Assembly: GCF_964204865.1 (NCBI RefSeq)
Contig: NC_135252.1
Span: 1,550,001-1,614,000, forward strand
DNA: 64,000 nucleotides
Source: Styela clava
Taxonomy: Eukaryota
Reading direction: 5' to 3'
Below are positions 33,301-57,700 of this stretch, in pieces. The notes under the pieces are model-generated. The model did no database searches and was not told where the DNA came from. It saw only the letters and a program-made list of their open reading frames with translations. The translations under genes were made by a program, and so were the position numbers. The number at the start of each line of letters is the position of its first letter. The first letter of the stretch is position 1.

Positions 33301-33563
33301 ACGATGTTATATTTATATAAATAAAAAACAACGGCTATTTTCACATGACGTAGTTAGGTAGCTGACCCTGAGATTTCTTTGGCGTTTTGATACAAATCTA
33401 TATATCTATCAGAAATTAGTACTTTTGCAGATATAAATGCGAATGTGATGAAAAATGCACTGGGGAAAATGTAGCAAATTGGATACATGTTTTAATAGAC
33501 CATGCTTAAATAATGGATCATGCAGGATCACAGACTACAAGTTTAACTGTTCTTGTTTAGAAG
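30387..33563 (+). pseudogene. Ig-EGF-ZP gene copy 1, 5' fragment only
   Basis: Signal exon MRYFYCVIFSALVCFGESFVPLEE is present. Exon 2 is deleted, the first Ig cysteine is lost by a 6-nt deletion, the exon 5 acceptor is mutated (CAG>CAA) with a deletion, and exon 6 is frameshifted. No downstream EGF or ZP exons. Confidence 0.85.
30860..32661. mobile_element. Non-autonomous hAT element in the copy-1 intron
   Basis: TIRs caggggtccgcaa ... ttgcggacccctg; TSD cttcagag/ctttagag. The empty site gtgtgctttagagg is seen in copies 3 and 4 (~49825, ~61997). Confidence 0.9.
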
Positions 33564-36116: not shown

Positions 36117-39100
36117 ATGAGCTACTTCTATTGCGTTATATTTTCTGCCTTGGTATGTTTTGGAGAATCTTCTGTGTCACTAGAAGAAGGTGAGATATAT
36201 ATGTTTATTTTAATATGCTGTAATTGTTGAAGGCAAAAACAGTCTGAACACTTGAAAAAACTTTCTTGTTCCATTCATGTTTGAAGTTCACTCAATAAGA
36301 AATTAAATGCAGTTATCTACGTATAGTTGTTGAATATTTCAGTATGGAAGCTGTGGTCGGTCTGTAATAACTTATATATATAATTCTTTACACTAGATTC
36401 AGAGATACCAAATATACATCAAGCGCGGTGAGTCTTTTTTTTTTAATAACAATTTTGTCTTCTTTCTGCGATTTCCTATACTATATCATATCTCTATAGT
36501 CTTATATGAGAACTTATCGCACAACCGAATTTACTTGTATAAATTTTACAACAGTCAATTTTTCAGGTTGCCGCATAATGATGGTATCACACGTGAGCAA
36601 GTGGTCCTTACTAAAGGAGAATCTTTGAAATTGGAATGTGAATTTTATCCATCTGTTGGATCCTGGTCTTATATTCAATGGTAGCATTTTCATTTCTTGG
36701 TGATGTTAAAGCATTTACATAACCTTAAATATTCTCTAACAAATTAAAACATTGCCTAAAAATCCTTGAAGGTGGAACTTCTCTTAATTTATATAACTAT
36801 AAATTACACCGAAGAAACTTGATATATGTTTTTATCATTCATCCAATTTCCAGGATAAAGCTCCATGAAGAAGAACAACAATTCAAGCATTCAATTATTC
36901 CCGCCAACCAAACATTCAACAATGGAAGCGCAGTGATATCTTCAATAGTTTTAGAGAGTGTGACTGGGAGCGATACAGCAAATTACAGCTGCATTTTCAC
37001 AACTGCTCTAGTCACTTCATCTATGGAGTTTTTCGTGGCAGTAAAAGGTGAGTTCTGAAACTGTGATTACATATTTAATTCACAAGTCTAATGATGGCAA
37101 TATACTAATTCCAAAGATTATGTTTTGTTTTCTAATCAGATAAAGAATTTTGTACCGAAAGTTTGTGCAAACCTCATGGACAATGTATAGAACTGTTGCA
37201 AGGGTACAGTTATTGAATTCGTGAATATTGGCAAACTTGCAATTGGAATTTTGGTATAATGTTCAAGCCGGCCGAATGAAAGCTTATTACAAAATATTCA
37301 ACCATTCTGGCTGTAGTATATGGTTCTATCTATATATTATATTACATAATCCGCGCGTAGACAATTCTTAGTAAAAAATCATCCTACTTAATATACGCTT
37401 CACTTTTTCAAATTTCAAATTATATTTGTTGAATTCAACGTAATTTTTTGTTATATCTGTCCGACACCGATATGTAGCTGGGGAAGAACACGCTGTTTTT
37501 GTGGCACTACAGATAGGGTCGCAAAAGCGGCCTTGTGATTATAACCGTACCTCAGTGGCTGGAATTATAAGTATATAATCTCATAAATTGGTTCAATTCC
37601 GGAGATCAGTTATGTAATGTGCGTTTGGCGTGTTTTAAGTTTCTATTATTTTACAATGTTATTATTATATAAATAAAAAACAACGGTTTTCTATTTTCAC
37701 ATGAGGTAAAGTGGTACGTAGTTGACCTGAGCTATCTTTGGCGTTTTGATACAAGTCTACATATCTCTCAGAAATTGAATCTTTTTGCAGATATAAATGC
37801 GAATGTGATGACGAATACACTGGGAAAGAATGTAGCATATTGGATACATGTTTTGATAGCCCATGCCTGAATAATGGATCATGCATGATCACAGACTACG
37901 GATTCAACTGTTCTTGTTTAGAAGGTAGAATTTATCATTTCAATTTTTGAACCAATGTCTTTGTTTGCAGTTTTCATAAAACGTTTTTACATTTTTGTTT
38001 TACAAATATTTCACCCAGACATCAACCAAGGCCACATTGACATATCTGTGTAACTTTAAAACGGCACAGTATATTTGAGAACTGATTTTTCAACAAACAC
38101 ATTTTACCAATAGCTTCAGATATTGCAATTTAAAATAAATTTACATGAGGAGATTAACTCAGCTAACCCGTATACATTCAAATCGCAAATATGCATTGAA
38201 AATTGCACAAACATTGTATATATGTAATGATTTTCTCTGTAGACTAGCGGGATTATAAGCACGCATGTTTTGTGCATGTTTTTTGCTGATTCGTCTTCAA
38301 ATGTACAAGTACAATACTCCTGAAAATCACATTACATTGATTTAGATTATATTAGAGTTTAGATATACGTATATTGAGAGAAGTAAAATTGCTTTATGGA
38401 TTTATTTGCTTATAATTATATGATTGACCCACTAATGACTGATTAGAGTTGTAGGAAAACTCTTGTTTCTGCAGAAAACGACTATTGCATCATATAATCG
38501 GCATAAATTGCTTAGAGGCTTTTTAACTCAAATAAATACGATAGAATATATATATTGTATTAGGTTTTTATTATAATAATAAAAATAGCGGAACCCATAA
38601 AAACGTAAAAATTTCGTGGATATGATATTTCGATTTCCATGGATAAAATATTTCGATTTCCTGTTGTAGATTTTCATTAGGACATGATACAATACAATGG
38701 TGCAATAATGATATGATAACGATCACAGTATGATCGAAAGCAGGAAATAGTTGAGTTACAACAATAAAATTTACTTATTAACCTTATAATTTGACATTTT
38801 CGATCGAAGGTTTTAAAGGAAAAACGTGTGAGAAAGAAGCTTGCCTGGCGTCAAGCTGTTATGGAGGAGGAAGTTGTCGAGAAACAAATGGCGGAAAAAT
38901 CAAATGCGACTGTCGATACAATCGTGCAGGAAAATATTGCGAACATGCTTGTTCATTCAGTAATTACAAGGTACTGATTTCTAACTAAAAATAAATCGTT
39001 TTTCTTTGGAAACATGATGTCTACTGATAAAATCATACGCATGGAAATATATTAAGTTGCTAGTAGTATATGATAAATAAAGGCGTATATTAAAAGTTAA

Positions 39101-42100
39101 TCATACTTTACAATTCGATTTTTTCAATTTGTTGTTTTAATTCAGAGTTTTATAATAGTCAGTTAACCTCATACCATCCTTATTTTTAACTCTTGCGTTT
39201 TACAAAATAACTTACAAATAATTATGCTGTGTTCTTATTTTGTCTTGTTTTCATTTATATGAAAAACTTGACATTAATTTTAAACATTGACGATACTTAC
39301 ATAATAGCGTTAATTTTTATTATTATGTGTAATATGACGGATTGTCATCCGTCTTTGAATCGAGTGTTTAATTTTGCATCAATTATGCTATCACTGAATA
39401 CTAATTGAGATATGCATTTCAGTTTAAATGTGACCCAAAAAAGGAGGGTCATGGATTTTTAGAAAAAAAAAATGATTTAGCCTACACTAATCTGGGTTGT
39501 AAATCTAACGTTCTAACGAAAGATTATCTTACTGTCTTCCAAGCGTAATTTGTTTATAAACTATTTGCAAATTTTGAGGAGTACAAATTGAAAAGCGCTG
39601 TCCCAAGTAGACTGAGTTTCGCAAATAGATTCATTCTAAGCTGAAAAGTTGCTAGAACTAAACATGTGCATCGAAACATCGAAAATGCCGTGTTCCGCTT
39701 GTCCCACAGTCGTTCCACGTTCTCCTATTCTTCGATTTTCTAAATCGTCGTTGTTGTTTTGGTATTGTTGGAATCCTTGGCTTTCCTTCGCAACTGCCGG
39801 ACCTTTCAATTTCAAACTAATTTTCAATACTTGAAAGCGAAAGAAGTCACTGGAAGGCGATACTTTTACCGTTTTCGGAGGATTACGGGGTCAGATATTT
39901 CACCAAAATATTGCTGTTTTATTTTAATTCGCGAGAGAACTTGTTGGTTTATGCCTTGTTTGTTTATGCTCTGTGTTGTCCATATGTTCGAGCACGGCTT
40001 TCTAAATGCGGTTTATTAAAATACCAAGAGCTTATTTCCACTGATATTTATCGCTGAAATGTTACTATGTTTTTTGCTCAGTGTCTTGCATTGAAATATT
40101 AAATATTGATGACATTAATTGAAATGGATACAATTCTGATATTTATTGTAACATAGTTTTTTGAAATCTCTTTCCACAGAGATGATCGTTCTTCGTCTTT
40201 TTAAATATAGAACTCTAGATTTTTATATAATAAACAATAATACACATGAAATTATTTTATACTTTAGTTCCACTACAGAAACTATTATTGCTCTCGATCG
40301 AAAACTTGTGTGATTGGTGCTGACGATGGAGTTGAAAAGTGCTATTGTGAAGAGCGCGGATCAGGGACTCACTGCATTATGTCATCTGGTATCCCGTATT
40401 TTATAAAACATAGCATTAGGATGGATTAAGCTAAGTCACATTTTATTCTTCAAGCCGAATAAATATACTTGTTTAATTTGAAGTTGACCAAACAGTTTGA
40501 CTTCTTTTTACGTAGAGCCTAAAAAAACATAATCTTTACCAAATCATCAATTTGTCTTTATTTCACAAGTTTCAAAGCACTGGGTAGTGGGTATTATAAC
40601 ATATCGCGCATATAATTTTTTTTTAATGATTTTTAAAAGCATTGCAGTGACACAACAGAATTGACTCTACTCATACAGTTCTCGAAAAAAAATAGTTGAT
40701 GTTAACTCAACGCATAATCGTACATATCTGTAATCTGCTTTTTTAAAACAATGTTTGCGTGCAGCCTACAGAGGTTAGCCATGTAACTGAAACTATTTCA
40801 TTTTGATTACTTTCTTTATGTCACCCAGAATTCCATCATGATTATAGCGATTCAATTATATGGACGTTCATTACCGTGATAGAAGTATTATACTTCTGGA
40901 TATATATTTTTTTTAGATGTTACGAACGAATGCCTAGAACCGAATATTTGTAATGGCCGTGGTACCTGCTACGACCTAACGTACAAATATTCCTGCGACT
41001 GTCATAGTTATGCATCTGGGACTAACTGCGAATTTTTTAACGAATGTGATACCTCTAACGTGAGTTTTTTCGAATTTTTCATATTTAACCCTGCTAAAAC
41101 GCTTAACTAGCATTCGTTCCTTTGCATCCTTGCCGTTATTGCCTATGTTTTACAACATACCGGTGCTCATGAAAAATTATAATTTTTTCTTTCCATACAA
41201 AAAAAATAAAGTAATAATTTTTATAATTTTATGGATATATTTTAGACTTATATTTGTTATGTTATATGTTATATTCAGGAGCAAATACCTGTTTATTGTA
41301 AATTGTAAATTTTACGTATAATCGTATAGTTTCTCATTGTTTATACAGCTTTGTCATCGATATGGAGGGACATGCGTTGATTTAGTACAGGGGTACAAGT
41401 GTACCGACTGTCCAAGGGGTCAGACTGGCGACAAATGTCAATATATGAAAAGTAGGTATTACGGCACTTTAAACATATGGATAGGCAGTATACAGAGTAT
41501 TTATTCTTCTCGCATACATCAATATGTGGTCAGTTTTAGTTTATGATATAGGAATTTAAAATTTGATTGCCCATCTATGCGTATGGTTTTGACATACCAT
41601 TCTCAATTAGACGCCCTAATCATGAAATTGTGAGATAATAATATGGGGTCGAATATGTAGAACGCACCAATAAAATTTGGTATGCTAAACCAACTTTTAT
41701 TGAGCCTATTTCTAGTTTTTGGGTAAAACGTCTTTAGTTTTGCTGCTATTATGAATGAATAAGCTTATATAATATATTTATCCCTTTTTTTCATTTAAAT
41801 TTGATTCAGTTATTACTAAAAGAAAATTTTCTATCAATGTTTGCTTGCATAGATCCGTGCAAAGTTACATGTGGGCAATCCTCTATGGACTTTAAATGTT
41901 ACATGAAATTTTTGAATTCTAAACTCCAAAAGATACCGATTTATCTAAATTTACAAACCGAAAATTGTGAATTCAAATCTCGATACGGCTATTCGTCTGA
42001 CGTGGTAACAAAATCTATTACATACAATGAGTGTGGAACCAAAATAGCGGTAAGAAGTTTTTGATTGACTGACTAAAGTAAGAATCTTTTCGTCAGCAAA

Positions 42101-45100
42101 TCCCAATATATGTTTTACAGCATGATGGAGACACAATTATTTATAGTAATTCTTTGCGAGCCGGCATTTTTGGAAATAAGGAAGAAGAGAATGATGTAAT
42201 TACCAGATTGGTAGGAAATTTTCGAGTAAGTTGACTGACATACATTAATTTATTGAACTGGTTTTGAAAATTTTAAATATAAAACAAGAGAAAGTGAACA
42301 TTACCGCTTCAAAATGTCAAAGTAGCGTACATGAATAAAAAAAACACGTGATTTAGATTCTATGAGAAGGGCTGTGCAAGTTTTACTTGAGTTCAAACAT
42401 GTTATAAAACATTGCATCAAGATTCAGTATGCACGATTCTTTTACATCAAGAGTTGAGGCCTGAATAGTTTACTCATTTATATCATTTCCAATCACCAAA
42501 TGTAGAATATAAATATATATAAACCAGTGGACCTATAATATAAATATGGTAAACTTCAATATTGTCTCATTGATTTCAATTAACAAAATCTATAAATCAT
42601 TAAAAATGAAATACTGTGCATTCGTGTTTTTCCTACAAGTACATTCATGCACAAGAATATTTGTATTAATTAACATAACAAATCATATATTCAAGTTTGA
42701 CATGGAATGCAGAATTCCGATAGTTTACAACGATACTTCAGCCATGATAAAAGATTATTCACTTGAAAGAAACGAATCAATTCATCTTCACGACGAACGA
42801 AAAGTAACTTTGTCAACGCTCGTTGCTTTTAAAAAGTATAAAAATGCTACTATTTGCTTTCGTTTATTACCTAGTGCTACTTTTTTACTCAATCATGTGA
42901 CTATTCACAAAATTTGTAATTTTCACTTGTAACAATAACGAAGTCAAATTGAGTCAAGTGCAATAGTTAATAAAATTTATGCAATATATTGTAGAATTTT
43001 TCTTGTGATTTGGAAAACTAGAAAAATTTGGAAACATTAGTTTCAACGAGCTGCTAAATTTGAAGTAATTGATAATATATTTTTATGTATTTCAATTACT
43101 GCAGTTAAACAACATATATATACTGTTTATTTTTTAGCCGTGATTGGAACTCGATCACAAAATATAATGTGGGAGACCGGCTCTATGTGGAAGTGAGTCT
43201 CTATATACTTAAATATAACAAACCCACGAACAGATACCCGAAATTTATACTTTGTTATATTAATAGAGTTTGGTCAAAAACGCAATATTTTGCAATTCGA
43301 TGGGCTCCGCCTACAATTTTCATGAGAGTATTAGATTTAAGAATACTTAAACTACATTGTGCATGATGGGGCCTACACTGATTACGATATCCTGATATTT
43401 GAATGTCGCTGCTGACGGATCGGTGCTAAACTTTGGTTATAGTGAAATTTTACTGTATAGCATTATCCAACATACAACTAAACTGTGAGATGCCGGAGAT
43501 TACTCAACATTTGAAAATGAGTTTTACTGAAAAAGAATTAGAGAGCTTAGAGAGAATTTTTGATATACAGTATAATTATTTGGCACGCTCCACTATATAT
43601 TCATTTTGTTTGTTCGTTTTTACATCATAGCTTGTCCTGCAAACGTCAAACCCAATTTTGTCACAAAATGGTGTTTTAAAACCAACCACGTGTTATGCGA
43701 CTCCTGCGAATGCGAACCTCGTTACGTCCTGCTAGAAAATGGGTGAGAATAAATTAAATTTTTCGAAATTAGAATAACTGAAATAAAATGTGGAAATAAT
43801 AAACAATTGTGGAGTTTTTAATAGCACATATTGAAGTGAAATCAAATATTTTAAAAAAATTACTAATTGAAAATTGTAATTTTCTTAATACATTTTAACG
43901 ATTGTTTGTTTTTGTATATAGATGTATAAGAGATAAAACATTCAGATATGAACAAAGGAACTCAAGAAGATCAGAAAACAATCGATTTGCTTATTTCAGT
44001 TTTGATTCATTTTCTTTCAAAGGAGAACGTGGTAAGGTACGATAGAACAGTTTCAATTTTGAATAATAGCAATCAGTAAAAATGTAAAAAAAAGGGTTAA
44101 AACACATGTGCGGATGTGCCAAGTTGCATTTAGAATATTTACTTGATGTAATACAATATACCACCAACAAAACTACTGTATTCTTGTTTGTTTACATGAC
44201 CGAAAGACAAATACATTGTATATAACCGGGAACTAAATATAAGTTAGTTCCTGATGTATTGCATGTGTTAGGTACAAATAGTGGTATATCCTAGCAAAAT
44301 CTGTTGCATAACACGGCGCCACAATATTATTGTTTTTTGAAAAACCTTGTTTATTGATTGATATTATGTTTAATGCAGCTTTACCTGCACTGTAATGCTC
44401 GGCTTTGCATTAACCGAACGAGTGGAGGGGAAGATTTCAGTTTTGAAGAATGCATGAATATATGCTCCGAGCAAAAGGTTTTTAGAACATTTTATTCAAT
44501 ACTTTTTTCTTTAGATAATTACTGTTACGTTATTTATTTATTATAATATAGTCAGCGATGGCACAGTGGTACGAACGATGAACTTACCACGCTTGCATCC
44601 CTTGTTCGACAAGTTTTTCACAACCTAAAGCAATTTTGCGATATGATGCGTGTGTCATCGAATATTGAAATTCCGGGTTCTAACTTCGTTTTCATACTTG
44701 TATCGAGAATGTACAATATTGGATAAGCAATGCCGAACAGGAAAGTAGTAGTAGCTCTTGTCATGCAGTAGCTTGTTGTACAGACCCGTGTTTGGGGAGA
44801 ATTATAGGTAAAATCTCTTCAAAATAATGAATAAAATGGGTCGGCAATGCTAAGCCAAAAGGATTACCGGACTCTCTAAAAACAGTAGGTTCGTACGTCA
44901 TAAATTCTCTCATCTAGAGTTGTAATAGCAGTGAACGCCACATAAACACGGTCGTTAATATAATATGTAAGTAGGGTGGGGTAAGTCGGACCCCTGGAAT
45001 ATGATGGACAGGCAAAATCAAATCCTTCTGATAGTGACACCCCGCGTTTTTTCGTCGCCCAAAACGCATGGCGTGAAAGAGCGACATCATGCGAATAACG

Positions 45101-46264
45101 ACAGAACCAAGATTTTACATTTCAATATCGGCAGCTTACAAGGCGGGGCTTTTTGGGTGAGGGGTGTTTCTGCTGGGACAGAAAAACGTGAACTGCGAAC
45201 TCGGATTTATTTTGTTTATTTACTGAAATTAGATACATAAGATTGAATAAATTCTTTGGTAGACTGCCAGTGCTCATTTTTGGGTAGGCAGGATCACTTA
45301 AGAGGTAGGGTGGATTTTGAGTGGGGGGGGGGGGGGGAGGGGGAGGGGACATTTTTCAAAATAGTCTGTTGGGAATGTCAATGGGCCTTTGTCATCGAGA
45401 CTTGTTGATAAGTATTTCTTGGTACTAAGTACTCTTTTACAACACGGATTAAAAGCACTCTCATCGCCATATTTATACTGGGTCTTCTAGAAGTTGGGTC
45501 CGGCCTAAAATCTCATCTTACCCCATCCAATTTTCCCCACAGTTTAAAATACCTCCAAGGTTATTCCAAGAAAATACAAAATAAATACTTCTAGAGGTTT
45601 GTATAAAGAAGACATAAAAAGTGCAAAAAATTTGTTGTTTTTTCTAAAGCTGTTCGAACACTTTTGAAAATTGCCATGTATTGTCCTTTACGTGGAAAAG
45701 ACGGACACACTGGTTAATACGCAGGAAAAATGCTCTGTTTAAACAAAATGTTAAGATCTAGGCGTTGACCAAAATCTTATGAGACATCATCAAGTTTGTT
45801 TTGATGTATGTCCGTCTTGCCCACAAAATGTTCAACTTACCCCGATATTTTTTAGGTGAAAATCGCGCGTAAATTCCGATTCGTTGCTATGGCAACAATG
45901 TGCAAATGTGGCAAGATAGCTGGAGGGCGGGTGCATAAATCACAAGTAGAACGAATGCATCTGCGGTATTTTGTAAAGAGTTATTCAAAATAATTTATTA
46001 GTGGGTCCGACTTCCCCCGACCTACTATAATTGTTGTTGGAAGCCATCTACGATCTGATAAAGATAGAAATAAAAGTTATACTAATATACTTTTAGAAGG
46101 GAGTTGGAGAGGAACTAGTCACGACTGCTTCATCTAGCGCAACTTCATCAACAACAGATGGTGGTGTATTAGCGAGAATGAAACGATTTATTTCAGAAAC
46201 AGATGATGATCGAGAACTAATCGATCGCCACACTGGAAATACTGTGTATATCTATGATGTATGA
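36117..46264 (+). CDS. Secreted signal-Ig-6xEGF-ZP domain protein, copy 2 (18 exons; frameshift in ZP-C, possibly a pseudogene or truncated product)
   Basis: Exons ~36117-36189, 36397-36427, 36567-36680, 36854-37047, 37140-37203, 37791-37924, 38810-38970, 40268-40388, 40917-41059, 41349-41451, 41853-42049, 42121-42225, 42696-42835, 43138-43192, 43631-43742, 43922-44036, 44379-44477, 46097-46264. Ig motif (LKLEC...W...DTANYSC), six 6-Cys EGFs, ZP motifs (YNECGT, IIYSNSL, GDRLYVE, CYATP, LLENGC, FSFDSFSF, LYLHCNARLC) and an RMKR furin site. No TM helix. Confidence 0.85.
44551..44875 (+). mobile_element. Decayed tRNA-derived SINE-like element (duplicate at ~56962-57286)
   Basis: A-box-like tggcacagtggt and B-box-like ggttctaa inside an intron. 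No intact cloverleaf. Confidence 0.4.
44971..46025. mobile_element. TIR non-autonomous DNA transposon (pogo-like) in the last intron of copy 2
   Basis: gtagggtggggtaagtcggaccc ... gggtccgacttcccccgacctac inverted termini. TSD not clean. Confidence 0.75.
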
Positions 46265-46960
46265 TATGCGTATGGCGTACTGTAAATATAATATGACATT
46301 GAATTCAGTTCATCTTATATCATATACATATTTGTATAAAGCCAATCTACTGATCATAGCTCATCAAAAATGGACAACACGCTATTGAACATTTAGTTGC
46401 TTCCCTGGAGAGGGTAATTGTCTTAGTCTGTTTTGAAAGCATTTTACATGAATATTTCGATTTGTTTGTTATATGTTATATCCAATCCTGTTGCAGTTTC
46501 AATGTGAATGTGGAATATGTTCTAAAAAAATCTGGACTGTTTGTACTCTCTAACTATTTTAGTTTACCTAAGCTCGAAAGTGTCAGAAGAAGTTTGATCA
46601 CGGCGTAAGCCGATATTTGTCCCGTGACTGCACACTGCACTCCTACAAATAGCTGAAACGTTCATGCATGGAGTGTTACTGTCATATTGAGGCTAGTTGT
46701 CCTGTGTCTGCATTAAACCTTCAAGTCCTAGACCGTATTAAAAATGGTTATAAAATATTAGTGGCTTCCAATTGGAGACCAAATGAAATTCGTGAAAATA
46801 AGAAAAAGAAAATAGAAAGAGTGAAAATTCAAGTGTAGAGTCTATAAAAGATTAGGCCCATTATTATTTTGAAATTGGATATTGACGGCTATAATAATTT
46901 TTCCATTGAAATATACTTGCTCACACTGAATTACTCTATAGCTCGTGAGAGTGTCGACTT

Positions 46961-47363
46961 ATTGGACACTTCAGTGGACATACCGATCGTTTCAATATTA
47001 TGTTGTTGTTGTTTTCGTCATCATTATCATTGAAAATCACTTTTCTCTTCAAATACTGGACCAATTGCTTTGAAATTTTCAGTAGTTAAAGATTGATTTT
47101 TTTGCCAGAAGGCTATTACTTTCATTCATTCCTAAATTTTCTATGAGTCTTATGAGATCTAATATTTCATCCAAAATTGCGCTGTATTATTTTTTAATTA
47201 TGTAAACACGGTTTTTAATCCGCCAAGCGTGACGGCTGACTGTGAAAATTCTTGCGACTGAAAACTCGGAATTTTTTTTAGGGTACGGTACCGGTAACGT
47301 CAAAGGTAAGAACTGCTTCGCTCTGGCCCATGTGTCCAAATATTTGAGCGTTGCTCACTTGTA
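46961..47363 (+). mobile_element. HINE/DINE-1-like element (duplicate at ~59133-59535)
   Basis: Same family as 22445-22686: ttggacac...gtggacat, (TTG)n, shared core ctggaccaattgctttgaaatttt, 3' tgtgtcca plus hairpin gagcgttgctc then cttgt. Confidence 0.65.
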
Positions 47364-48741
47364 TTATTTCATTCTTCCTAAAATTTTCTAAACTTAGTAA
47401 TATTAGTTGAAGTTTTGATAAAACCACCCGCGCAAATGCCAGGCTCAGATCCTCAACAGCTTCCAACGCAATTGGTCCAGTAGTTCATGAGAAAATCGAT
47501 TTGTCATAGCAATACGAACAAAAACAAAATAATAACAAAACGATCCATATGTACACTTCGTGTCAAAAATAGATTCGTGGTTAAAATGACCATGGGTGCA
47601 AATTCCGTGTGTGCAAATATCCGTGGAATCAAATGTCCATGGTCCAAATATCTATGAGTAAAATCTGTATGCGGATGCTAAAATGTGTGAGTGCGAATGT
47701 ACGAGGGAAAATGGTCGTGAGTTGAATCTCCATTTGTGCCAAAATATACAAGTCCAAATGTCTGGGCGCAGTTTAGGGGTACAAATATACGTGGCTGTAT
47801 AGATAATTAAATCTGATCTTTCACAATGTTAGTTTTTAACGTAACTGCATGCATATTCTTTCGGCAATGTATCAAAACAATTTAGACCTGTTCTACCGCA
47901 ACCAATGCAAATTGGGTGTGGCTGGTCGATTAACTGCGACCTCTCAAGTCTCTCATAATTGACGAGAAGCAGAATTATTTAGGATGTGACCATTTAAAAT
48001 CATATTTAAATAAGATGTATTTGTTGGGCTGAGCAAGCCCCAAAATTGCCCATTGTAGTTAAGCCCAGAACAATAAACCATCCATTGCCACGTAAGGTCG
48101 CCAATTTTTCTTATTGAAGTTGGCCCGCACGCGGCATGCTCATTCTCTTCAGTGATGACGATTTGACATATTTGAAAAACTTTGGCGCGACCCTTTTACG
48201 ACCTCAATATTATGTCCCATATAAGAAAAAATTCATATTAACTTCAACTGCTTAAAGTCTTGCACGAATTGCCATTTACTGGCGGGTGATACACAACCAT
48301 ATAATTCTATGAAGTTGCAGTAGTTCTTGACATTACAATGATGGACTATTTCTTTACTAAAGGGTTCATTTTACCTTTGAGTGACCTTGCTTTGAGCAAA
48401 TGCACCAAAAAGCTATTTCTATATATGTCAAGTGCTTCCTTCCATTGGGTTCTTTGGTTGGGCCAATTTGGTGATTTGGATTGATTTGATTTTATCAAGA
48501 ACTTTTTCTCAATTACATAATATTGTTTGTGTTTTGTATGTAACGAAAAAAAAGTATCTCCACCGTTTTTCTACTTGTGAACGACATGAAAGCACGTTGC
48601 TGAAATCAGTATATATATATAATTTGGGATCTGTTTATTTGGATATATGGTATAAAGTTACGGCATTATCGAAATTTATTTTCTCTCAATTCTTCGACGT
48701 TGAATCACTCACGTTACATCATGGATTTTAGTTCATCAAAA

Positions 48742-51700
48742 ATGGGATACTTCTATTGCATTATATTTTTTGCCTTGGTATGTTTCGGAGAATCTTCTGT
48801 GTCATTAGAAGAAGGTGGGATATGAATATTTTTAAATGCTGTAATTGTTCAAGTCAAAAATAATTTGCACATGTAAAGAAACGTGATTGTTCTAGTCAGT
48901 AAGTTTGACATTCGCTCAAAATTTGAAGCAGCTACCCATACCCATGTATAGTTTTTGATTTTTCAAGATGTGTAAGTTGGTCGGTTCTGTAATAACTAAT
49001 ATAAGCTGATTCTTTATACCAGATTCAGAGATACCATATATGCATCAAGCGCGGTGAGTCATTTTCGTTTAATAACAAAAGTAATCAGTTGATTTGATTT
49101 TGCGCTTATATATTTCTCTTTGGGCGAACCTGGAATACTATATCAGGCTGCCCCAACGGCCTTATCGTTAGTCAATCCGAAAGGGATAAATAATAGGTAC
49201 AAGAGGATTCTGGACATCTTCGGGTTGCAAAGTTGCCGCGTAGCCAGCCGATGGTCGCCTATTTTTCTCAACACCATCCGATTGCACATGCAATTGTCCT
49301 TATCCGACATGGACTGGTAACCGAACTAAAAGTTGTGACGATTGAGCCGTCGTATTAAATTTTGTCTCCTGGCGATTTCCTATAATATATTATATCTCTA
49401 TAGTCTTATAAGAGAACTTTTTGCAAAACCGAATTAAATTAAATGTTTAAGTTTTAAAACAATCTACCTTTCAGGTTGCCGCATGATGATGGTATCACAC
49501 GTGACCAGGTGGTCCTTACTAAAGGAGAATCTTTAAAATTGGAGTGTGAATTTTATCCATCTGCTGGATCCTGGTCTTATATTCAATGGTAGCATTTTAC
49601 TTCCTTGGTGATGTTAAGCATTCACATCACCGTAAATATTCCTTAACAAATTAACACATTGTCTTAGAATCCTTAGCAGGCGGAACCTCGCTTAGCGCTA
49701 GATGATTCAACTTAATGAAACTCGTTAAATATTCATACTAATTAAAACAGGTTTATTGATAAATACAAATGATTAATAGCTTTGCTTGTTTTGCTATAAA
49801 AGTTTCGGGTTCGATCAGGATTAGTGTGCTTTAGAGGAACTATAACTCATGGTGCTTAAATGTGACCTATAACTTACACCGAAGAAACTTAATATACGTT
49901 TTTATCATTCATCCATATTTTCAGGATAAAACTTCATGAAGATGGACAACAATTTAAGCATTCAATTATTCCCGCTAACCATACATTTAACAATGGAAGC
50001 GCAGTGATATCTTCAATAGTTTTAGAGAGTGTGACTGGGAGCGATACAGCAAATTACAGCTGCATTTTAACAACTGCTCTAGTCACTTCATCTATGGAGT
50101 TTTTCGTGGCAGTAAAAGGCGAGTTATTTAGAAATTGTGATAACATATTTAATTCACAAGCCTAATGATGACATTGTACTAATTGAATATATTATGTTTT
50201 TTTCTAATCAGATAAAGAATTTTGCACCGAAGGTTTGTGCAAGCCTCATGGACGATGTATAGAACTGTTGCGAGGGTACAGTCATTGAATTCATAAATAT
50301 TGGCAAATTTGAAATTGGAATTCTTGGTATATTGTTTGAGCCGGCCGAATGAAAGATATTTATTAACTATTTAACCATTCTGGCTGTAGTACATAGTCAT
50401 ATGATATCTGTATCATATTGCATATTCGCGCGTAGACACTTCTTAAAAAATCATCTTACTTAGTATGCTTTGATTTTGCTGCGAAAATGTCAAATTCTAT
50501 TTGTTGAATTCAACGTAATTTTTCGTTATATCTAACCTATCCGACACCGCTATGTAACTGAGGAAAGACAAGCTGGTTTTGTGGCACTACAGTAGTAAAT
50601 GGTCGCAAAAGCGGCCATGTTTTCTATAGCCAGCCGTACCTCAGTGGCTGGAATTATAAGTATATAATCTCATAAATTGGTTCAATTCCGGAGATCAGTT
50701 ATGTAATGTGCGTTGGGCGTTTTTCAAGTTTCTATTATTTTACGATGTTATTATCATATAAATAAAAAACAACGGTAGTTATGCTGTTATACGTTGTTGA
50801 CCTGAGCTTTTTTTGGCGTTTTGATAGAAATCTAGATATCTATCAGAAAATAACAGTTTTGCAGATATAAATGCGAATGTGATGACGAATACACTGGGGA
50901 AGAATGTGGCATATTGGATACATGTTTTGATAGACCATGCCTAAATAATGGATCATGCATGATCACAGACTACGGATTCAACTGCTCTTGTTCAGAAGGT
51001 AGAATTTATCATTTCAATTTTTGGACCAATGTCATTGTTTGCAGTTTTCATAAAACGACTGTGAATTTTTGTTTTACAAATATTTCACCTCGAAATTAAC
51101 CCAGGTCACATTGACATATTTGTGCAACCTCAAGACGGCACAGCATATTTTAGAACTGATTTTTAAACAAACCCATATTATCAATAGCTTCAGATATTTA
51201 ATTTTTTTAAACACGATTTGACTGCACGTTTCCAAAATCATGAGGGGATCAAATCCACCAATCGCCTGCATTCAAATCGCAAACTTGTATTAAAAACTTG
51301 ATTAATAATGTGTGTGCTGCTTTTCTCTGTAAATTAGCGGTATTATGAGCAAGCCGTTTTGTTGCATGGTTTTTTGCTGATTTGCCCTCAAAGTTACAAT
51401 ACTTTTGAAAATCACAATGGATTGATTTAGATTATATTAGAGGTTATATATACGCTTTCAAATTTACAATATTTTTGAAAATCACAATAGATTGATTTAG
51501 ATTATATTAGAGGTTATATATACGCCTTCAAAGTTACAATATTTTTGAAAATCACAATAGATTGATTTAGATTATATTAGAGATTATATCTACGTATATT
51601 GAGGAAAGTAATGTTGTTTTATGTATTTATTTCATTAAAATTGTTATACGATTGATCGACTAATGCCTGATTGGAATTTAAAAAAGACTCTTGTTTCTGC

Positions 51701-54700
51701 TGAAAACGACTGTTCCATCATATAATCGATCTCAATTGCTTAGACTTTGTATTTCCAGTAAATACGAAAATGAAATATAATGAATATATGATAAAGAAAA
51801 TAGTGAAACCCATATTTACTGGATAGGATATTTTGATTTCCAACCATTTCACTGCAGTCGAAAGTCTACTAAAATGGCGACACCAACAAGATAATGGAGC
51901 AATATTTATATGATAACGATCACAGTATGATAGAAAGCAGGAAATAGTTGAGTAACTACAATAAAACTGCCTTATTAACCTTACATTTTGACATTTTCGA
52001 TTAAAGGTTTTAAAGGAAAAACGTGTGAGAGACAAGTTTGCATGGAGGCAAGCTGTAATGGAGGAGGAAGTTGTCGAGAAACAAGTGACGGAAAAATCAA
52101 ATGTGACTGTCGATACAATCGTGCAGGAAAATATTGCGAACATGCTTGTTCATTCAGTAGATCTAAGGTACTGATTTCTAACTAAAAATATATCGTTTCT
52201 CTTGATAAAAAAAGGTTGTCCGCTAATAAAATCAAATGCATGGAAATATTTAGTTCCTACCAATACGCTAGTTGTATAGGATAAAGGCGTATATTAACGT
52301 TAACGTCCGGTCACTCTCGAGATTTAAAGTCAGTGACATCCATACCGTCCTTGTTTTTAACACTTGTGTTTTACAAAATAATTTTGTCCCCATCTTGTAA
52401 ACTTGTTTTGAGCCGTGTGCTCATTTTGTGTTATTTCCATTTACAAGATAAACTTGACATTAATGTAATGTTGAAAACCAGATGCACATTAACGATTCTG
52501 AGATATTAGCCTTGATTTTTGTTATTATGTGTAATGTGACGGATTGTCATCCGCCGTCGAAACGAGTGTTTATTTGTTGCATGAATTATGCTATCATGCT
52601 ACTGAACACTAATTGAGATATTTATTTTAAATTGAATGAGCCGATGAAAGACCTGCTTATATGTTAACTGAAATTAATTAGAATATTTGATAATGACATT
52701 AATCAAAATAGATACAATTCTGGTATTTATTATAACAAACTTTTTGAAATCTCTTTTCACAGAGTTGATACTACTTCGTTTTTTGTTATTCTTTTTTTAT
52801 CTACAACTCTGGAATTTTCATTAATAAACAATAATGCAGATGGAATTTTTTATACTTCCTAAATAGTTCCAACACGGAGACTCTTATTGCTATCGAGCGA
52901 AAACTTGTGTGATTGGTGCTGGCGATGGAATTGAAAGGTGCAGATGTGACAATCGCGGATCAGGGACTCACTGCATTATGTCATCTGGTATCCTGAATTT
53001 TATAAAACATAGCATTAGGATGGATTGAGCTAAATCACCTTTTATTCTTGAAAACGACTAACTATACTTGTTTAATTTGAAGTTGACCAGACAGCTTGAC
53101 ATTTTTTTTATGTAGATCACCTTGAGACCATAAGCTGTACAACCATCCAATTGTCTTTATTTCACACATGTTTGTAATCACCGGGTATCATAACACACAC
53201 ATAAGGTATTGACTCCATTCGTACAGTTCCTGAGAAAAATTAGTAATATATAATCGTACATATATATCTCAAATATGCTGTTTTTTGAAACAATGTTTGC
53301 GTGTAGCTATCGGAGGTTATCCATGTAACTAACACTATTTCAATATAACCAACCTTGAATATAATCATCTGAACATGTAAAATTACCTTGATGCAAGTCT
53401 GGATTTGGACTTTTGGATATTTTTTTTTCAGATGTAAGAAACGAATGCCTAGAACCGAATATTTGTAGTGGCCGTGGTACTTGCTACGACCTAACTGACA
53501 AATATTTTTGCGACTGTCATAGTTATGCATCTGGAACTAACTGCGAGTTTTTTAACGAATGTGGTACCTCTAACGTGAGTTATTTCGAATTTTTCCATAT
53601 TTAACTAGCATTTTTTCCATACAATGTAATAATTTTCGAAATTTTATGGATATATTTTGAACTTATATTTGCTATGTTATATGTTATATTCAAAAGCAAA
53701 TAACGATTTGTTGTAAATCGTAAATTTTACGTAATCGTATAGTTTCTTATTGTTTATACAGCTTTGTCAACGATATGGAGGGACATGCGTTGATTTAGTG
53801 CAGGGGTACAAGTGTACCCGCTGTCCGAGTGGTCAGACTGGCGACAAATGTCAATATATGAAAAGTGGGTATTACGGCACTTCCAACATATGGATAGGCA
53901 GTATACAGAATATTTATTGTTTTCTCATACATCAATATGTTGTCAGTTTTAGTTTATGATATATGAATTTAAATTTGATTGCCCATCTATGCGTATGCTT
54001 TTGACATACCATTCTCAATTAGACCCCCTAATGATGAAATTGTGAGATAATAATATGGGGTCGAATATGTAGAACGCACCAATAAAATTTGGTATGCTAA
54101 ACCAACTTTTATTGAGCCTATTTCCAGTTTTTGGATAAAACGTCTTTAGTTTTGCTGCTATTATGAATGAATAAGCTTATATAATATATTTATCCCTTTT
54201 TTTCATTTAAATTTGATTCAGTTATTACTAAAAGAAAATTTTCTATCAATGTTTGCTTGCATAGATCCGTGCAAAGTTACATGTGGGCAATCCTCTATGG
54301 ACTTTAAATGTTACATGAAATTTTTGAATTCTAAACTCCAAAAGATACCGATTTATCTAAATTTACAAACCGAAAATTGTGAATTCAAATCTCGATACGG
54401 CTATTCGTCTGACGTGGTAACAAAATCTATTACATACAATGAGTGTGGAACCAAAATAGCGGTAAGAAGTTTTTGATTGACTGACTAAAGTAAGAATCTT
54501 TTCGTCAGCAAATCCCAATATATGTTTTACAGCATGATGGAGACACAATTATTTATAGTAATTCTTTGCGAGCCGGCATTTTTGGAAATAAGGAAGAAGA
54601 GAATGATGTAATTACCAGATTGGTAGGAAATTTTCGAGTAAGTTGACTGACATACATTAATTTATTGAACTGGTTTTGAAAATTTTAAATATAAAACAAG

Positions 54701-57700
54701 AGAAAGTGAACATTACCGCTTCAAAATGTCAAAGTAGCGTACGTGAACAAAAAAAAACGTGATTTAGATTTTATGAGAAGGGCTGTGCAAGTTTTACTTG
54801 AGTTCAAACATGTTATAAAATATTGCATCAAGATTCAGAATGCACGATCCTTTTACATCAAGAGTTGAGGCCTGAATAATGTAATCATTTTTATTCATTT
54901 CCAATCACCAAATGTATAATATAAATATATATAAACCAGTGGACCTATAATATAAATATGGTAAACTTCAATATTGTCTCATTGATTTCAATTAACAAAA
55001 TCTATAAATCATTAAAAATGAAATACTGTGCATTCGTGTTTTTCCTACAAGTACATTCATGCACAAGAATATTTGTATTAATTAACATAACAAATCCTAT
55101 ATTCAAGTTTGACATGGAATGCAGAATTCCGATAGTTTACAACGATACTTCAGCCATGATAAAAGATTATTCACTTGAAAGAAACGAATCAATTCATCTT
55201 CACGACGAACGAAAAGTAACCTTGTCAATGCTCGTTGCTTTTAAAAAGTATAAAAATGATACTATTTGCTTTCGTTTATTACCTAGTGCTACTTTTTTAC
55301 TCAATCACGTGACTATTCACAAAATTTGCAATTTTTACTTGCAACAATAACGAAGTCATATTGAGTCAAGTGCAATAGTTAATAAAATTCATGCAATATA
55401 TTGTAGAACTTTTTTATGATTTGGAAAACTAGAAAAATTTGAAAACATTAGTTTGAACGAGCTGCTAAATTTGAAGTAATTGATAATATATTTTTATATA
55501 TTTCAATTACTGCAGTTTAACAACATATATATACTATTTATTTTTTAGCCGTGATTGGAACTCGATCACAAAATATAATGTGGGAGACCGGCTCTATGTG
55601 GAAGTGAGTCTCTATATACTTAAATATAACAAACCCACGAACAGATACCCGAAATTTATACTTTGTTATATTAATAGAGTTTGGTCAAAAACGCAATATT
55701 TTGCAATTCGATGGGCTCCGCCTACAATTTTCATGAGAGTATTAGATTTAAGAATACTTAAACTACATTGTGCATGATGGGGCCTACACTGATTACGATA
55801 TCCTGATATTTGAATGTCGCTGCTGACGGATCGGTGCTAAACTTTGGTTATAGTGAAATTTTACTGTATAGCATTATCCAACATACAACTAAACTGTGAG
55901 ATGCCGGAGATTACTCAACATTTGAAAATGAGTTTTACTGAAAAAGAATTAGAGAGCTTAGAGAGAATTTTTGATATACAGTATAATTATTTGGCACGCT
56001 CCACTATATATTCATTTTGTTTGTTCGTTTTTACATCATAGCTTGTCCTGCAAACGTCAAACCCAATTTTGTCACAAAATGGTGTTTTAAAACCAACCAC
56101 GTGTTATGCGACTCCTGCGAATGCGAACCTCGTTACGTCCTGCTAGAAAATGGGTGAGAATATATTAAATTTTTCGAAATTAGAATAACTGAAATAAAAT
56201 GTGGAAATAATAAACAATTGTGGAGTTTTTAATAGCACATATTGAAGTGAAATCAAATATTTTAAAAAAATTACTAATTGAAAATTGTAATTTTCTTAAT
56301 ACATTTTAACGATTGTTTGTTTTTGTATATAGATGTATAAGAGATAAAACATTCAGATATGAACAAAGGAACTCAAGAAGATCAGAAAACAATCGATTTG
56401 CTTATTTCAGTTTTGATTCATTTTCTTTCAAAGGAGAACGTGGTAAGGTACGATAGAACAGTTTCAATTTTGAATAATAGCAATCAGTAAAAATGTAAAA
56501 AAAAGGGTTAAAACACATGTGCGGATGTGCCAAGTTGCATTTAGAATATTTACTTGATGTAATACAATATACCACCAACAAAACTACTGTATTCTTGTTT
56601 GTTTACATGACCGAAAGACAAATACATTGTATATAACCGGGAACTAAATATAAGTTAGTTCCTGATGTATTGCATGTGTTAGGTACAAATAGTGGTATAT
56701 CCTAGCAAAATCTGTTGCATAACACGGCGCCACAATATTATTGTTTTTTGAAAAACCTTGTTTATTGATTGATATTATGTTTAATGCAGCTTTACCTGCA
56801 CTGTAATGCTCGGCTTTGCATTAACCGAACGAGTGGAGGGGAAGATTTCAGTTTTGAAGAATGCATGAATATATGCTCCGAGCAAAAGGTTTTTAGAACA
56901 TTTTATTCAATACTTTTTTCTTTAGATAATTACTGTTACGTTATTTATTTATTATAATATAGTCAGCGATGGCACAGTGGTACGAACGATGAACTTACCA
57001 CGCTTGCATCCCTTGTTCGACAAGTTTTTCACAACCTAAAGCAATTTTGCGATATGATGCGTGTGTCATCGAATATTGAAATTCCGGGTTCTAACTTCGT
57101 TTTCATACTTGTATCGAGAATGTACAATATTGGATAAGCAATGCCGAACAGGAAAGTAGTAGTAGCTCTTGTCATGCAGTAGCTTGTTGTACAGACCCGT
57201 GTTTGGGGAGAATTATAGGTAAAATCTCTTCAAAATAATGAATAAAATGGGTCGGCAATGCTAAGCCAAAAGGATTACCGGACTCTCTAAAAACAGTAGG
57301 TTCGTACGTCATAAATTCTCTCATCTAGAGTTGTAATAGCAGTGAACGCCACATAAACACGGTCGTTAATATAATATGTAAGTAGGGTGGGGTAAGTCGG
57401 ACCCCTGGAATATGATGGACAGGCAAAATCAAATCCTTCTGATAGTGACACCTCGCGTTTTTTCGTCGCCCAAAACGCATGGCGTGAAAGAGCGACATCA
57501 TGCGAATAACGACAGAACCGACATTTTTCAAAATAGTCCGTTGGGAATGTCAATGGGCCTTTGTCATCGAGACTTGTTGATAAGTATTTCTTGGTACTAA
57601 GTACTCTTTTACAACACGGATTAAAAGCACTCTCATCGCCATATTTATACTGGGTCTTCTAGAAGTTGGGTCCGGCCTAAAATCTCATCTTACCCCATCC

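What the first reader, a model, noticed from the sequence alone, without database searches (positions are those of the whole stretch)
38810..52987. Hypervariable EGF3-EGF4 under apparent positive selection between tandem Ig-EGF-ZP paralogs
Seen, by hand alignment of copy 2 vs copy 3: exon 7 (38810-38970 vs 52007-52167) has 11 amino-acid changes and 1 purely silent codon change; exon 8 (40268-40388 vs 52867-52987) has 13 amino-acid changes and 0 silent. All cysteines are kept. Neighbouring exons are balanced (Ig exon 4 about 4 replacement/5 silent; exon 9 5/5), and the ZP exons are almost identical. The most variable stretch is an unusually long C1-C2 loop in EGF4 (SFSNYKFHYRNYY vs SFSRSKFQHGDSY). 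Known: ascidian vitelline-coat HrVC70/VC120 (EGF repeats plus ZP) is a polymorphic sperm receptor implicated in self/non-self recognition. Inference: a localised specificity module on a constant ZP scaffold, i.e. a candidate gamete-recognition, allorecognition or host-microbe recognition locus.
Basis: partly seen in the sequence, partly recalled or inferred. Interest (0 to 1): 0.85.

Follow-up and report, generated by a model that had tools for sequence, protein, structure and literature searches.

The report
Fast-evolving EGF4 in sea-squirt ZP genes

Summary
Exon 7 has 11 amino-acid changes and 1 silent-only codon. Exon 8 has 13 changes and 0 silent. All cysteines are kept. Spliced transcript contigs confirm every exon 3-12 boundary.

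The genome is Styela clava, where RefSeq calls these genes 'uncharacterized' or 'uromodulin-like'.

- **Array:** c1 is a fragment. c2 and c3 are both cut short by a net 7-nt deletion in ZP-C exon 15. c4 and c5 are intact (719 and 772 aa).
- **c3 is a chimera:** it is a ~0.1%-old unequal-crossover product, c4 5' joined to c2 3'. That explains the 'almost identical' ZP exons, so they say nothing about constraint.
- **Selection signal:** the N:S contrast with other exons is robust (28:2 versus 23:21; 0 of 5000 redistributions as extreme). Omega above 1 is only nominal: E7+E8 omega 4.2, p 0.02; exon 8 alone 16:0, p 0.003. It is borderline after correction, rests on three distinct sequences, and dN does not exceed local intron divergence.
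- **Alleles:** they show no hypervariability in EGF4, which argues against allorecognition.
- **ZP-N:** between the intact copies it is as diverged in protein as EGF3-4.
- **Open points:** tissue and ligand are unknown.

Another scan note (s1-817608) reports EGF-ZP paralogs with exon-restricted homogenisation elsewhere in this genome.

Verdict: a new, lineage-restricted member of a known kind, with moderate interest.

The parts
30654..33563 (+). c1: truncated pseudogene fragment (exons 3-6 only, with deletions and a frameshift)
   Evidence: 6-nt and 12-nt deletions, a 1-nt deletion in the exon 6 homolog gives stops, and there are no exon 7-18 homologs. The RefSeq c2 model P0006 starts in its EGF exon.
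36117..46264 (+). c2 gene (LOC120341862): signal peptide, Ig, six EGF domains and a ZP module, truncated in ZP-C in this assembly
   Evidence: Exon map. Junctions of exons 2-12 seen in spliced contigs. RefSeq P0006 is 591 aa and ends at the premature stop. The last-exon ORF at 46097-46261 matches the tails of P0001/P0005.
38810..38970 (+). c2 exon 7: last Cys of EGF2, linker, EGF3, and the first Cys plus 6 loop residues of EGF4
40268..40388 (+). c2 exon 8: the rest of EGF4 (type A, shared with c5)
43631..43735 (+). c2 exon 15 (ZP-C): net 7-nt deletion near 43706, frameshift, TAG stop at 43733-43735
   Evidence: the exon is 112 nt against 119 nt in c4/c5, and the translation ends ...CYATPANANLVTSC*. 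RefSeq P0006 ends at the same place. P0006 has no Pfam ZP-C hit.
48721..58436 (+). c3 gene (LOC144420887): recent chimera of c4 5' and c2 3', with the same ZP-C truncation
   Evidence: 8 differences in 7920 nt against c4; 32 in 3399 nt against the c2 3' part; P0007 maps exactly
52007..52167 (+). c3 exon 7 (identical to c4 exon 7)
52867..52987 (+). c3 exon 8: EGF4 type B (identical to c4)
56042..56146 (+). c3 exon 15 with the same 7-nt deletion and premature stop
45348..57519 (.). 12,172-bp unit repeated from 57520 onward at 99.9% identity (unequal-crossover duplication)
   Evidence: (45348-51828 versus 57520-64000, 99.92%)
60893..64000 (+). c4 gene, 5' part (LOC144420886, 'uromodulin-like', intact 719 aa); it continues beyond the window to extended coordinate 70888
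   Evidence: Pfam ZP-C 2e-17.

Best explanation
What it is. This is a Styela clava-restricted tandem cluster of genes. Each encodes a secreted protein with a signal peptide, one Ig-like domain, six EGF-like domains and a uromodulin-type ZP module, followed by an RMKR cleavage motif and a short tail with no membrane anchor.

How the cluster changes. It is continually reshaped by unequal crossing-over and gene conversion. c3 is a fresh c4/c2 chimera. c4 and c5 are homogenised over exons 1-6. c2 and c4 are homogenised over ZP-N.

The variable module. Against that background one segment has stayed different between paralog lineages. It is EGF4, with its 13-residue C1-C2 loop split by a phase-0 intron, plus the EGF2/3 linker and the first loops of EGF3. 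It differs almost only by amino-acid replacements, while the cysteine framework and two blocks of exon 8 are frozen even at silent sites.

Most likely mechanism (inferred). The ZP module polymerises into filaments and the Ig-EGF arm projects from them, as in uromodulin and ascidian egg-coat EGF-ZP proteins. The EGF3-4 loops form a ligand-binding surface that has been driven apart between paralogs, giving paralog-specific rather than allele-specific binding.

Shown here: anatomy, expression and splicing of c2, the mosaic history, the N:S skew, and the truncation of c2 and c3. Inferred: positive selection, filament display, ligand binding, and any role in fertilisation.
For: Anatomy and identity:
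- Pfam finds ZP-C at 2e-17, several EGF families, and a sub-threshold Ig_3 hit.
- The uromodulin ZP module in the PDB matches at 7e-11 over residues 352-643.
- The species and RefSeq models come and map exactly to 18 exons.

Expression and splicing: spliced contigs match c2 at 99% or better, and a loose end carries the c3/c4-type loop.

N:S skew:
- NG86 for c2 versus c3/c4, E7+E8: Nd 28, Sd 2, omega 3.8. The rest of the gene has omega 0.29 (2x2 p 0.0002).
- For the intact pair c4 versus c5: 20:2 against 53:39, p 0.003.
- ML: omega 4.2, p 0.022; exon 8 alone p 0.003.
- Binomial tests with kappa 2 give 0.007-0.011.
- The post-hoc-corrected test of heterogeneity gave 0 of 5000 redistributions as extreme.

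Lineage and flanks:
- On the c3/c4 branch, exon 8 has 11 changes, all replacements. That is about twice the intron rate for the same branch (OR 2.0, p 0.04).
- pN in exon 8 (0.17) equals the flanking intron divergence (about 0.16), even though 18 of its 40 codons are invariant.

Mosaic history.

Fixed versus allelic differences: differences are fixed between paralogs, but there are no amino-acid polymorphisms in EGF4 within c2 or c5.
Against: - Only three distinct exon 7-8 sequences exist (c2, c3=c4, c5), and exon 8 has essentially one deep A/B split, so the tests are not independent.
- The region was picked after inspection. Corrected p values for omega above 1 are about 0.03-0.08.
- Exon 7 alone has omega 1.6, not significant.
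- dN (0.14 for E7+E8) does not exceed deep-intron divergence (0.22). The high omega owes much to an unexplained shortage of silent changes: 2 seen against about 8-11 expected from introns. Against the silent rate of the other exons that shortage is only p 0.08.
- Four multi-hit codons inflate codon-model omega.
- c2 and c3 are truncated and show frame-shifting exon skipping.
- No tissue, localisation or ligand data are available.
- The AF2 model was unusable (mean pLDDT 31).
Confidence: 0.5

Rival explanations
1. Relaxed constraint plus chance. The non-cysteine positions of EGF3-4 are simply free to vary, evolving at about the neutral rate. The near-absence of silent changes is a sampling fluctuation or a by-product of exon-centred gene conversion. 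No adaptive diversification is involved.
For: - dN for E7+E8 (0.14) is at or below local intron divergence (0.15-0.22).
- For c2 versus c5, omega is 1.1.
- Exon 7 alone is not significant.
- The silent shortage is only p 0.08 when measured against the dS of the other exons.
- The region was chosen post hoc.
- The C-terminal tail also has omega 1.3.
- Scan note s1-817608 reports exon-restricted homogenisation in other EGF-ZP paralogs of this genome (not tested here).
Against: - 24 replaced codons against 1 silent-only codon gives p about 0.007 under neutrality.
- Exon 8 shows 16:0 and 14:0.
- Replacements cluster in loops and in multi-hit codons, while adjacent blocks are invariant even at silent sites.
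- The replacement rate on the c3/c4 branch in exon 8 is about twice the intron rate.
Confidence: 0.3
2. An allelic self/non-self (HrVC70-like) or allorecognition locus. EGF3-4 would be hyperpolymorphic among individuals and would determine self-sterility or fusion compatibility.
For: - The organism is an ascidian.
- It has an EGF-plus-ZP architecture.
- The variable positions (C1-C2, C3-C4, linkers) resemble those described for HrVC70 and HaVC80 (PMC9265791).
- The array varies in structure.
Against: - Between two assemblies, the c5 alleles differ at 8 residues: 1 is in exon 7, 0 in EGF4 and 5 in ZP-N. The c2 alleles are identical across EGF4-EGF6.
- Four transcript runs show only 38891 G>A (replacement) plus two silent changes in c2 exons 7-8.
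- The architecture differs from HrVC120, which has 12 EGF domains and no Ig.
- No s-Themis-like partner gene lies in the window.
Confidence: 0.07
3. A decaying gene cluster. The copies are pseudogenes or on their way to becoming so, and the replacement excess reflects loss of function.
For: - c1 is a fragment.
- c2 and c3 carry a premature stop in ZP-C.
- c2 transcripts show frame-shifting skipping of exons 5 and 11.
- The distant paralog has an in-frame stop.
Against: - c4 and c5 are intact over 18 exons.
- Outside exons 7-8, omega is 0.2-0.5 in every pair, c2 included.
- All cysteines are kept.
- Most exon 8 changes lie on the branch leading to the intact c4.
Confidence: 0.1

Closest known systems
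HrVC120/HrVC70 and HaVC80, and the VC70-like protein HrVLP-1 (5 EGF + ZP), of Halocynthia (ascidian vitelline coat)
   Same: All come from stolidobranch ascidians. All have a signal peptide, tandem EGF-like repeats and a C-terminal ZP module. Variable positions lie in restricted EGF loops and linkers, including C1-C2 in HaVC80. O-fucose-type C2-x4-S/T-C3 motifs are present in EGF2 and EGF3 (PMC9265791; sequence reading).
   Different: This family has an N-terminal Ig-like domain and only six EGF domains, against 12-13 in HrVC120. No sequence relationship could be tested, because no relatives outside S. clava turned up in any library. Variation here is between paralogs, not between alleles. Gonad expression and coat localisation are unknown.
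Uromodulin / GP2 (vertebrate EGF + ZP filament proteins)
   Same: The ZP module aligns to the solved uromodulin ZP module (E 7e-11). An EGF domain lies directly before ZP-N, and a basic cleavage motif follows ZP-C. RefSeq names c4 'uromodulin-like'. The filament-core-plus-projecting-arm model is borrowed from this family.
   Different: There is no D8C domain. There is no GPI or transmembrane anchor, since the tail has no hydrophobic stretch. An Ig domain sits at the N-terminus. This is not an ortholog.
CiVC57 and the polymorphic oocyte ZP proteins of Ciona
   Same: These are ascidian egg-coat ZP proteins with EGF repeats, and some are reported to vary among individuals (PMC8849226).
   Different: CiVC57 has a vWF domain, many EGF repeats and a transmembrane domain. 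No detectable sequence similarity was retrieved.
Abalone VERL / egg-coat ZP proteins evolving under concerted evolution plus positive selection (from my own knowledge, not tested here)
   Same: There too, repeated units are homogenised by conversion while a recognition part diverges adaptively.
   Different: VERL repeats are ZP-N units within one gene. Here the units are whole genes and the variable part is an EGF domain.

Membership tests
ZP-module proteins | ZP-C domain | tested here: met
   Pfam PF00100 scores 63.9 bits against a cut-off of 24.6, E 2e-17, in c4. Not met in c2 and c3, which are truncated by the frameshift.
ZP-module proteins | ZP-N domain preceding ZP-C | tested here: met
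   The PDB uromodulin ZP module aligns over residues 352-643, E 7e-11. On exon 11 alone the Pfam ZP-N hit is sub-threshold (18.5 against 24.7 bits).
ZP-module proteins | Signal peptide, a consensus basic cleavage site after ZP-C, and a following hydrophobic patch or membrane anchor | tested here: inconclusive
   A signal-peptide-like exon 1 and an RMKR motif in the last exon can be read from the sequence. No transmembrane or GPI-like hydrophobic tail is present. No predictor was run.
EGF-like domain repeats | Six-cysteine EGF pattern recognised by profile | tested here: met
   The EGF, hEGF, EGF_2 and EGF_TEN families hit EGF1-3, 5 and 6. EGF4 (exon 8) has the C-x13-C-x5-C-x10-C-x-C-x8-C pattern but no Pfam hit of its own.
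Ig-like domain | Profile match and the canonical Cys...W...D-x-A-x-Y-x-C signature | tested here: inconclusive
   Ig_3 scores 22.8 bits, below the cut-off of 30 (E 1.4e-4). The signature LKLEC...W...DTANYSC is present. The AF2 model was too poor to check the fold.
HrVC70/VC120-type vitelline-coat sperm receptor | Sequence orthology to HrVC120 | not testable with these tools
   No Halocynthia sequence was retrievable. The libraries returned only S. clava proteins.
HrVC70/VC120-type vitelline-coat sperm receptor | 12-13 EGF repeats directly after the signal peptide | tested here: not met
   The proteins have one Ig-like domain followed by six EGF domains.
HrVC70/VC120-type vitelline-coat sperm receptor | High allelic polymorphism at restricted EGF sites | tested here: not met
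   There are 0 amino-acid differences in EGF4 and 1-2 in exon 7, across two assemblies and four transcript runs. The sample is small.
HrVC70/VC120-type vitelline-coat sperm receptor | Gonad/oocyte expression and localisation on the vitelline coat | not testable with these tools
   Run metadata were coded and carried no tissue. No paper mentions these loci.
Uromodulin/GP2 | D8C domain between the EGF domains and the ZP module | tested here: not met
   No D8C hit in Pfam.

The most novel reading that the evidence does not exclude
The EGF3-4 module is a paralog-coded recognition determinant of an ascidian extracellular coat, most plausibly the egg coat. Selection actively protects it from the gene conversion that homogenises the rest of the array. 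That would explain why silent sites stay similar while loop residues are driven apart, and it would make copy-number and chimera polymorphism in the array a source of variation in mating or binding specificity in an invasive species.
Probability: 0.2. Interest if true: 0.65.

Novelty: new member of a known kind. Interest (0 to 1): 0.4.

Why it matters
If the EGF3-4 arm is a binding surface under diversifying selection, this cluster would be a tractable Styela counterpart to the Halocynthia VC70 and Ciona egg-coat systems. The specificity would be carried by paralogs and by structural variants of the array, not by alleles.

The cluster is also a clean natural example of three processes acting within 60 kb: unequal crossing-over that creates a chimeric gene, conversion mosaics, and a frameshift spreading with a duplication.

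As it stands, the evidence shows a rapidly evolving domain in an uncharacterised, lineage-restricted ZP family. That is interesting but not surprising for ascidian ZP-EGF genes.

Tried and rejected
- **AlphaFold2 of c4** with the 7-sequence family alignment gave mean pLDDT 30.7. That is unusable, so I ran no fold search and did not map variable residues onto a structure.
- **Searches for relatives outside S. clava** all returned only S. clava proteins. These were phmmer of exon 11 against 1.84 billion representatives, and word-indexed searches with P0001 and with the ZP region of P0004. The ESM Atlas gave only generic ZP clusters.
- **Literature:** there are no hits for the locus or protein accessions and nothing useful on S. 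clava selfing.
- **Neighbouring genes** are short-chain dehydrogenases and the like. No PKD/REJ (s-Themis-like) partner is present.
- **The distant paralog** at C3:13.85 Mb is too diverged and is broken, so it is useless for dS.
- **A different true reading frame in exon 7.** I rejected this. The second open frame is a composition artefact that an old gene model happened to use, and spliced contigs plus the Cys pattern fix the frame.
- **RNSRR in exon 16 as the cleavage site.** I rejected this too. Comparison with uromodulin places that motif inside ZP-C, and RMKR in the last exon is the better candidate.
- **Joined models.** I sent no self-joined spliced model to any search tool. Exons were searched by reference, and whole-protein searches used RefSeq proteins that the tools had returned. 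Exons were joined only inside local scripts, for frame checks and codon alignments.


Full report
**Check of the observation**

- Exon 7, in the frame starting at 38812 / 52009, differs at 11 residues.
- Exon 8 differs at 13 residues.
- All cysteines are kept.
- The EGF4 C1-C2 loop reads SFSNYKFHYRNYY in c2 and SFSRSKFQHGDSY in c3.

The codon list shows a single silent-only codon in exon 7 and none in exon 8. There are 30 nucleotide differences, spread 11/12/7 over the three codon positions. The other variable exons show 6/10/28 (p 0.002).

**Gene model and expression**

One read-laying run (5,901 letters, window 36500-42400, four runs) returned spliced contigs with GT..AG joints. These fix the c2 exons as follows:

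| Exon | Coordinates |
|---|---|
| 3 | 36567-36680 |
| 4 | 36854-37047 |
| 5 | 37140-37203 |
| 6 | 37791-37924 |
| 7 | 38810-38970 |
| 8 | 40268-40388 |
| 9 | 40917-41059 |
| 10 | 41349-41451 |
| 11 | 41853-42049 |
| 12 | 42121-42225 |

One contig runs through exons 6-7-8 with a single mismatch. Frame-shifting skipping of exon 5 and of exon 11 is also seen. Loose ends at 38962 carry a c3/c4-type loop with one further replacement, so type-B transcripts exist as well.

Exon 1 (36117-36189) encodes a signal-peptide-like start. The phase-0 intron between exons 7 and 8 cuts the 13-residue C1-C2 loop of EGF4.

**Organism and family**

A phmmer search with exon 11 against 1.84 billion representatives found only three proteins. 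Cluster look-ups identify them as Styela clava RefSeq proteins. On this same 25.6-Mb contig RefSeq annotates:
- c5 as LOC120343009, 772 aa;
- c4 as LOC144420886, 'uromodulin-like', 719/718 aa;
- c2 as LOC120341862, 591 aa;
- c3 as LOC144420887, 586 aa.

The c3, c4 and c5 models map exactly onto the genome. c4 and c5 have 18 exons, and the two exons in question are exons 7 and 8.

Domain evidence is as follows.
- Pfam gives ZP-C (2e-17), several EGF families and a sub-threshold Ig_3 hit for c4.
- The solved uromodulin ZP module aligns at E 7e-11.
- Word-indexed searches with P0001 and with the ZP region of P0004 returned only S. clava proteins. The family is therefore lineage-restricted as far as these libraries can see.
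- The tail has an RMKR motif and no hydrophobic anchor (sequence reading).

**Structure of the array**

Self-comparison and the 30 kb downstream show five units on the + strand:
- c1, a fragment with frameshifts;
- c2;
- c3;
- c4, which runs off the window;
- c5, with a 4.3-kb transposase-like insertion in intron 14.

A broken distant paralog lies 12.3 Mb away.

The four-way alignment gives these divergences:

| Comparison | Region (c2 coordinates) | Differences |
|---|---|---|
| c3 vs c4 | start to about 43290 | 8 in 7,920 nt |
| c3 vs c4 | 3' of 43290 | 6-11% |
| c3 vs c2 | from about 41700 to the end | 32 in 3,399 nt |

The spacers 45348-47797 and 57520-59969 are 99.9% identical. This is the signature of an unequal crossover between c4 and c2, so c3 is a c4-5'/c2-3' chimera. 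That agrees with scan note s1-814269.

Two consequences follow. First, 'c2 versus c3' in exons 7-8 is really c2 versus c4. Second, the near-identity of the ZP exons reflects recent shared descent, with identical introns, and not constraint.

**Truncation of c2 and c3**

Exon 15 is 112 nt in c2 and c3 but 119 nt in c4 and c5. The frame shifts just after the conserved CYATP motif and stops 9 codons later. The RefSeq models end at the same place, and c2 lacks a Pfam ZP-C hit.

An older RefSeq model (P0001) joins c2-type EGF4-6 to an intact c4-like 3' end. That could be a real haplotype or a collapsed assembly.

**Selection tests**

Nei-Gojobori counts:

| Pair | E7+E8 Nd:Sd | omega, E7+E8 | Comparison set | Its Nd:Sd | Its omega | 2x2 p |
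|---|---|---|---|---|---|---|
| c2 vs c3 | 28:2 | 3.8 | other variable exons | 23:21 | 0.27 | 0.0002 |
| c4 vs c5 (intact pair) | 20:2 | 2.7 | rest of the gene | 53:39 | 0.35 | 0.003 |
| c2 vs c5 | 15.5:3.5 | 1.1 | rest of the gene | 52:41 | 0.30 | 0.08 |

For c2 versus c3, redistributing the differences over exons never matched the contrast for any adjacent exon pair (0 of 5000).

My pairwise ML codon model gives:
- E7+E8, c2 versus c3: omega 4.2, LRT p 0.022;
- exon 8 alone: 16 N : 0 S, p 0.003;
- exon 8 alone, c3 versus c5: 14:0, p 0.003;
- exon 7 alone: omega 1.6, not significant.

Binomial tests with kappa 2 give 0.007-0.011. After allowing for the post-hoc choice of region, omega above 1 is borderline, at about 0.03-0.08.

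**Caveats from the mosaic history**

- Introns 7 and 8 support the tree ((c3/c4, c5), c2). In exon 8, however, c5 groups with c2 at 11 sites against 4. Exon 8 therefore has two types, A (c2, c5) and B (c3, c4), and the pairwise tests sample one split.
- Local intron divergence is 0.22 (c2-c3), 0.22 (c2-c5) and 0.15 (c3-c5). In the 50-nt windows next to the exons it is about 0.16.
- dN for E7+E8 (0.14) therefore does not exceed the intron rate. pN in exon 8 (0.17) merely equals it, although 18 of its 40 codons are invariant even at silent sites.
- On the c3/c4 branch the replacement rate in exon 8 is about twice the intron rate (OR 2.0, p 0.04).
- Part of the high omega comes from a shortage of silent changes. 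Two were seen, against about 8-11 expected from introns (p about 0.001-0.01). Against the silent rate of the other exons the shortage is only p 0.08. I cannot explain it. Exon-centred conversion, as scan note s1-817608 suggests for other EGF-ZP genes of this genome, is one candidate.

**Tests of the wider interpretation**

- Between the intact c4 and c5, ZP-N has dN 0.103 (omega 0.36), as much protein divergence as EGF3-4 at 0.095. The ZP part is therefore not a constant scaffold.
- The c5 alleles from two assemblies differ at 8 residues. One is in exon 7, none in EGF4, and five in ZP-N. The c2 alleles are identical through EGF4-EGF6.
- Transcript contigs add one replacement (38891 G>A, which gives the c3 state) and two silent variants in c2 exons 7-8.
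- This pattern, fixed between paralogs and quiet within them, fits past divergence of paralog specificity. It does not fit an allelic self/non-self system like the one described for HrVC70 (PMC9265791).
- Tissue of expression could not be learned, because run metadata are coded and no paper mentions the loci. No s-Themis-like gene is in the window.

**Comparison with known systems**

The nearest described systems are the Halocynthia vitelline-coat EGF-ZP proteins: HrVC120/VC70, HaVC80 and HrVLP-1, the last with 5 EGF domains plus ZP. Vertebrate uromodulin/GP2 is also close. The ZP module and the idea of an EGF arm displayed on a ZP filament are shared with these.

The Ig domain, the count of six EGF domains, the absence of D8C and of an anchor, and paralog-level rather than allele-level variation all differ from them. 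Orthology to HrVC120 could not be tested.

I file this as a new, lineage-restricted member of the rapidly evolving ascidian EGF-ZP kind.

**What failed or was left out**

- The AF2 model had pLDDT 31, so nothing structural was done.
- I sent no joined spliced model of my own to any search tool. Exons were searched by reference, and whole-protein searches used proteins that the tools had returned.
- The window contains no N runs.

**Verdict**

Confidence is about 0.5 for adaptive divergence of an EGF3-4 binding surface between paralogs, and about 0.3 for relaxed constraint plus chance. Interest is 0.4.

Noticed in passing
window 45348-57519 versus 57520-64000 and beyond: A 12,172-bp tandem unit at 99.9% identity. 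c3 is a chimera of c4 5' and c2 3', made by unequal crossing-over. The frameshifted ZP-C exon was copied along with it.
   Followed up: yes
window 43631-43735 and 56042-56146: A net 7-nt deletion in ZP-C exon 15 of c2 and c3 gives a premature stop more than 50 nt upstream of later junctions, so the transcripts are likely NMD targets. Even so, c2 transcripts are found in several runs.
   Followed up: partly
window 50119-50120 (c3); the same site in c4 and c5: The donor of intron 4 is GC in c3, c4 and c5 but GT in c1 and c2. The RefSeq models still splice there.
   Followed up: partly
window 37140-37203 and 41853-42049: c2 transcript contigs skip the 64-nt exon 5 or the 197-nt exon 11. Both events shift the frame.
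   Followed up: partly
window 38795-38974: A second open frame of 60 codons overlaps exon 7 in both copies. The older RefSeq model XP_039266355.1 uses it as its N-terminus, through a donor 11 nt upstream. It is probably a composition artefact.
   Followed up: partly
window 33452-33563 to 36397: The RefSeq model of c2 (P0006) starts in the EGF exon of fragment c1 and splices into c2 exon 2, bypassing c2's own signal-peptide exon (36117-36189). This suggests read-through transcription from c1.
   Followed up: no
L008/L009, extended coordinates 81206-85534 (c5 intron 14, outside the window): A 4.3-kb insertion carries a 634-aa ORF that looks like a zinc-finger/hAT-type transposase. It was not checked against Pfam.
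   Followed up: no
G000:C3:13847000-13853000 (L005, L006, L011): A distant paralog has the same exon order, an in-frame TAA in exon 10, and an inverted exon 7 fragment lying between its ZP exons. RefSeq's older partial model calls it 'crumbs homolog 1-like'.
   Followed up: partly
window 2845-3810 (-), with related copies near 1-822 and 10225-10818: Intronless short-chain dehydrogenase ORF (adh_short, 2.5e-42) present as tandem, partly decayed copies.
   Followed up: no
window 37791-37924 and 38810-38970 (EGF2, EGF3): CLNNGSC in EGF2 and C[YN]GGGSC in EGF3 fit the O-fucosylation consensus C2-x4-S/T-C3, which has been discussed for HrVC70 binding of sperm fucosidase.
   Followed up: no
window exons 7-8 versus introns 7-8: In all three pairwise comparisons, silent-site divergence in exons 7-8 (0.04-0.07) is several-fold lower than in the flanking introns (0.15-0.22). 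Exon 9 shows no such gap. This is unexplained.
   Followed up: partly
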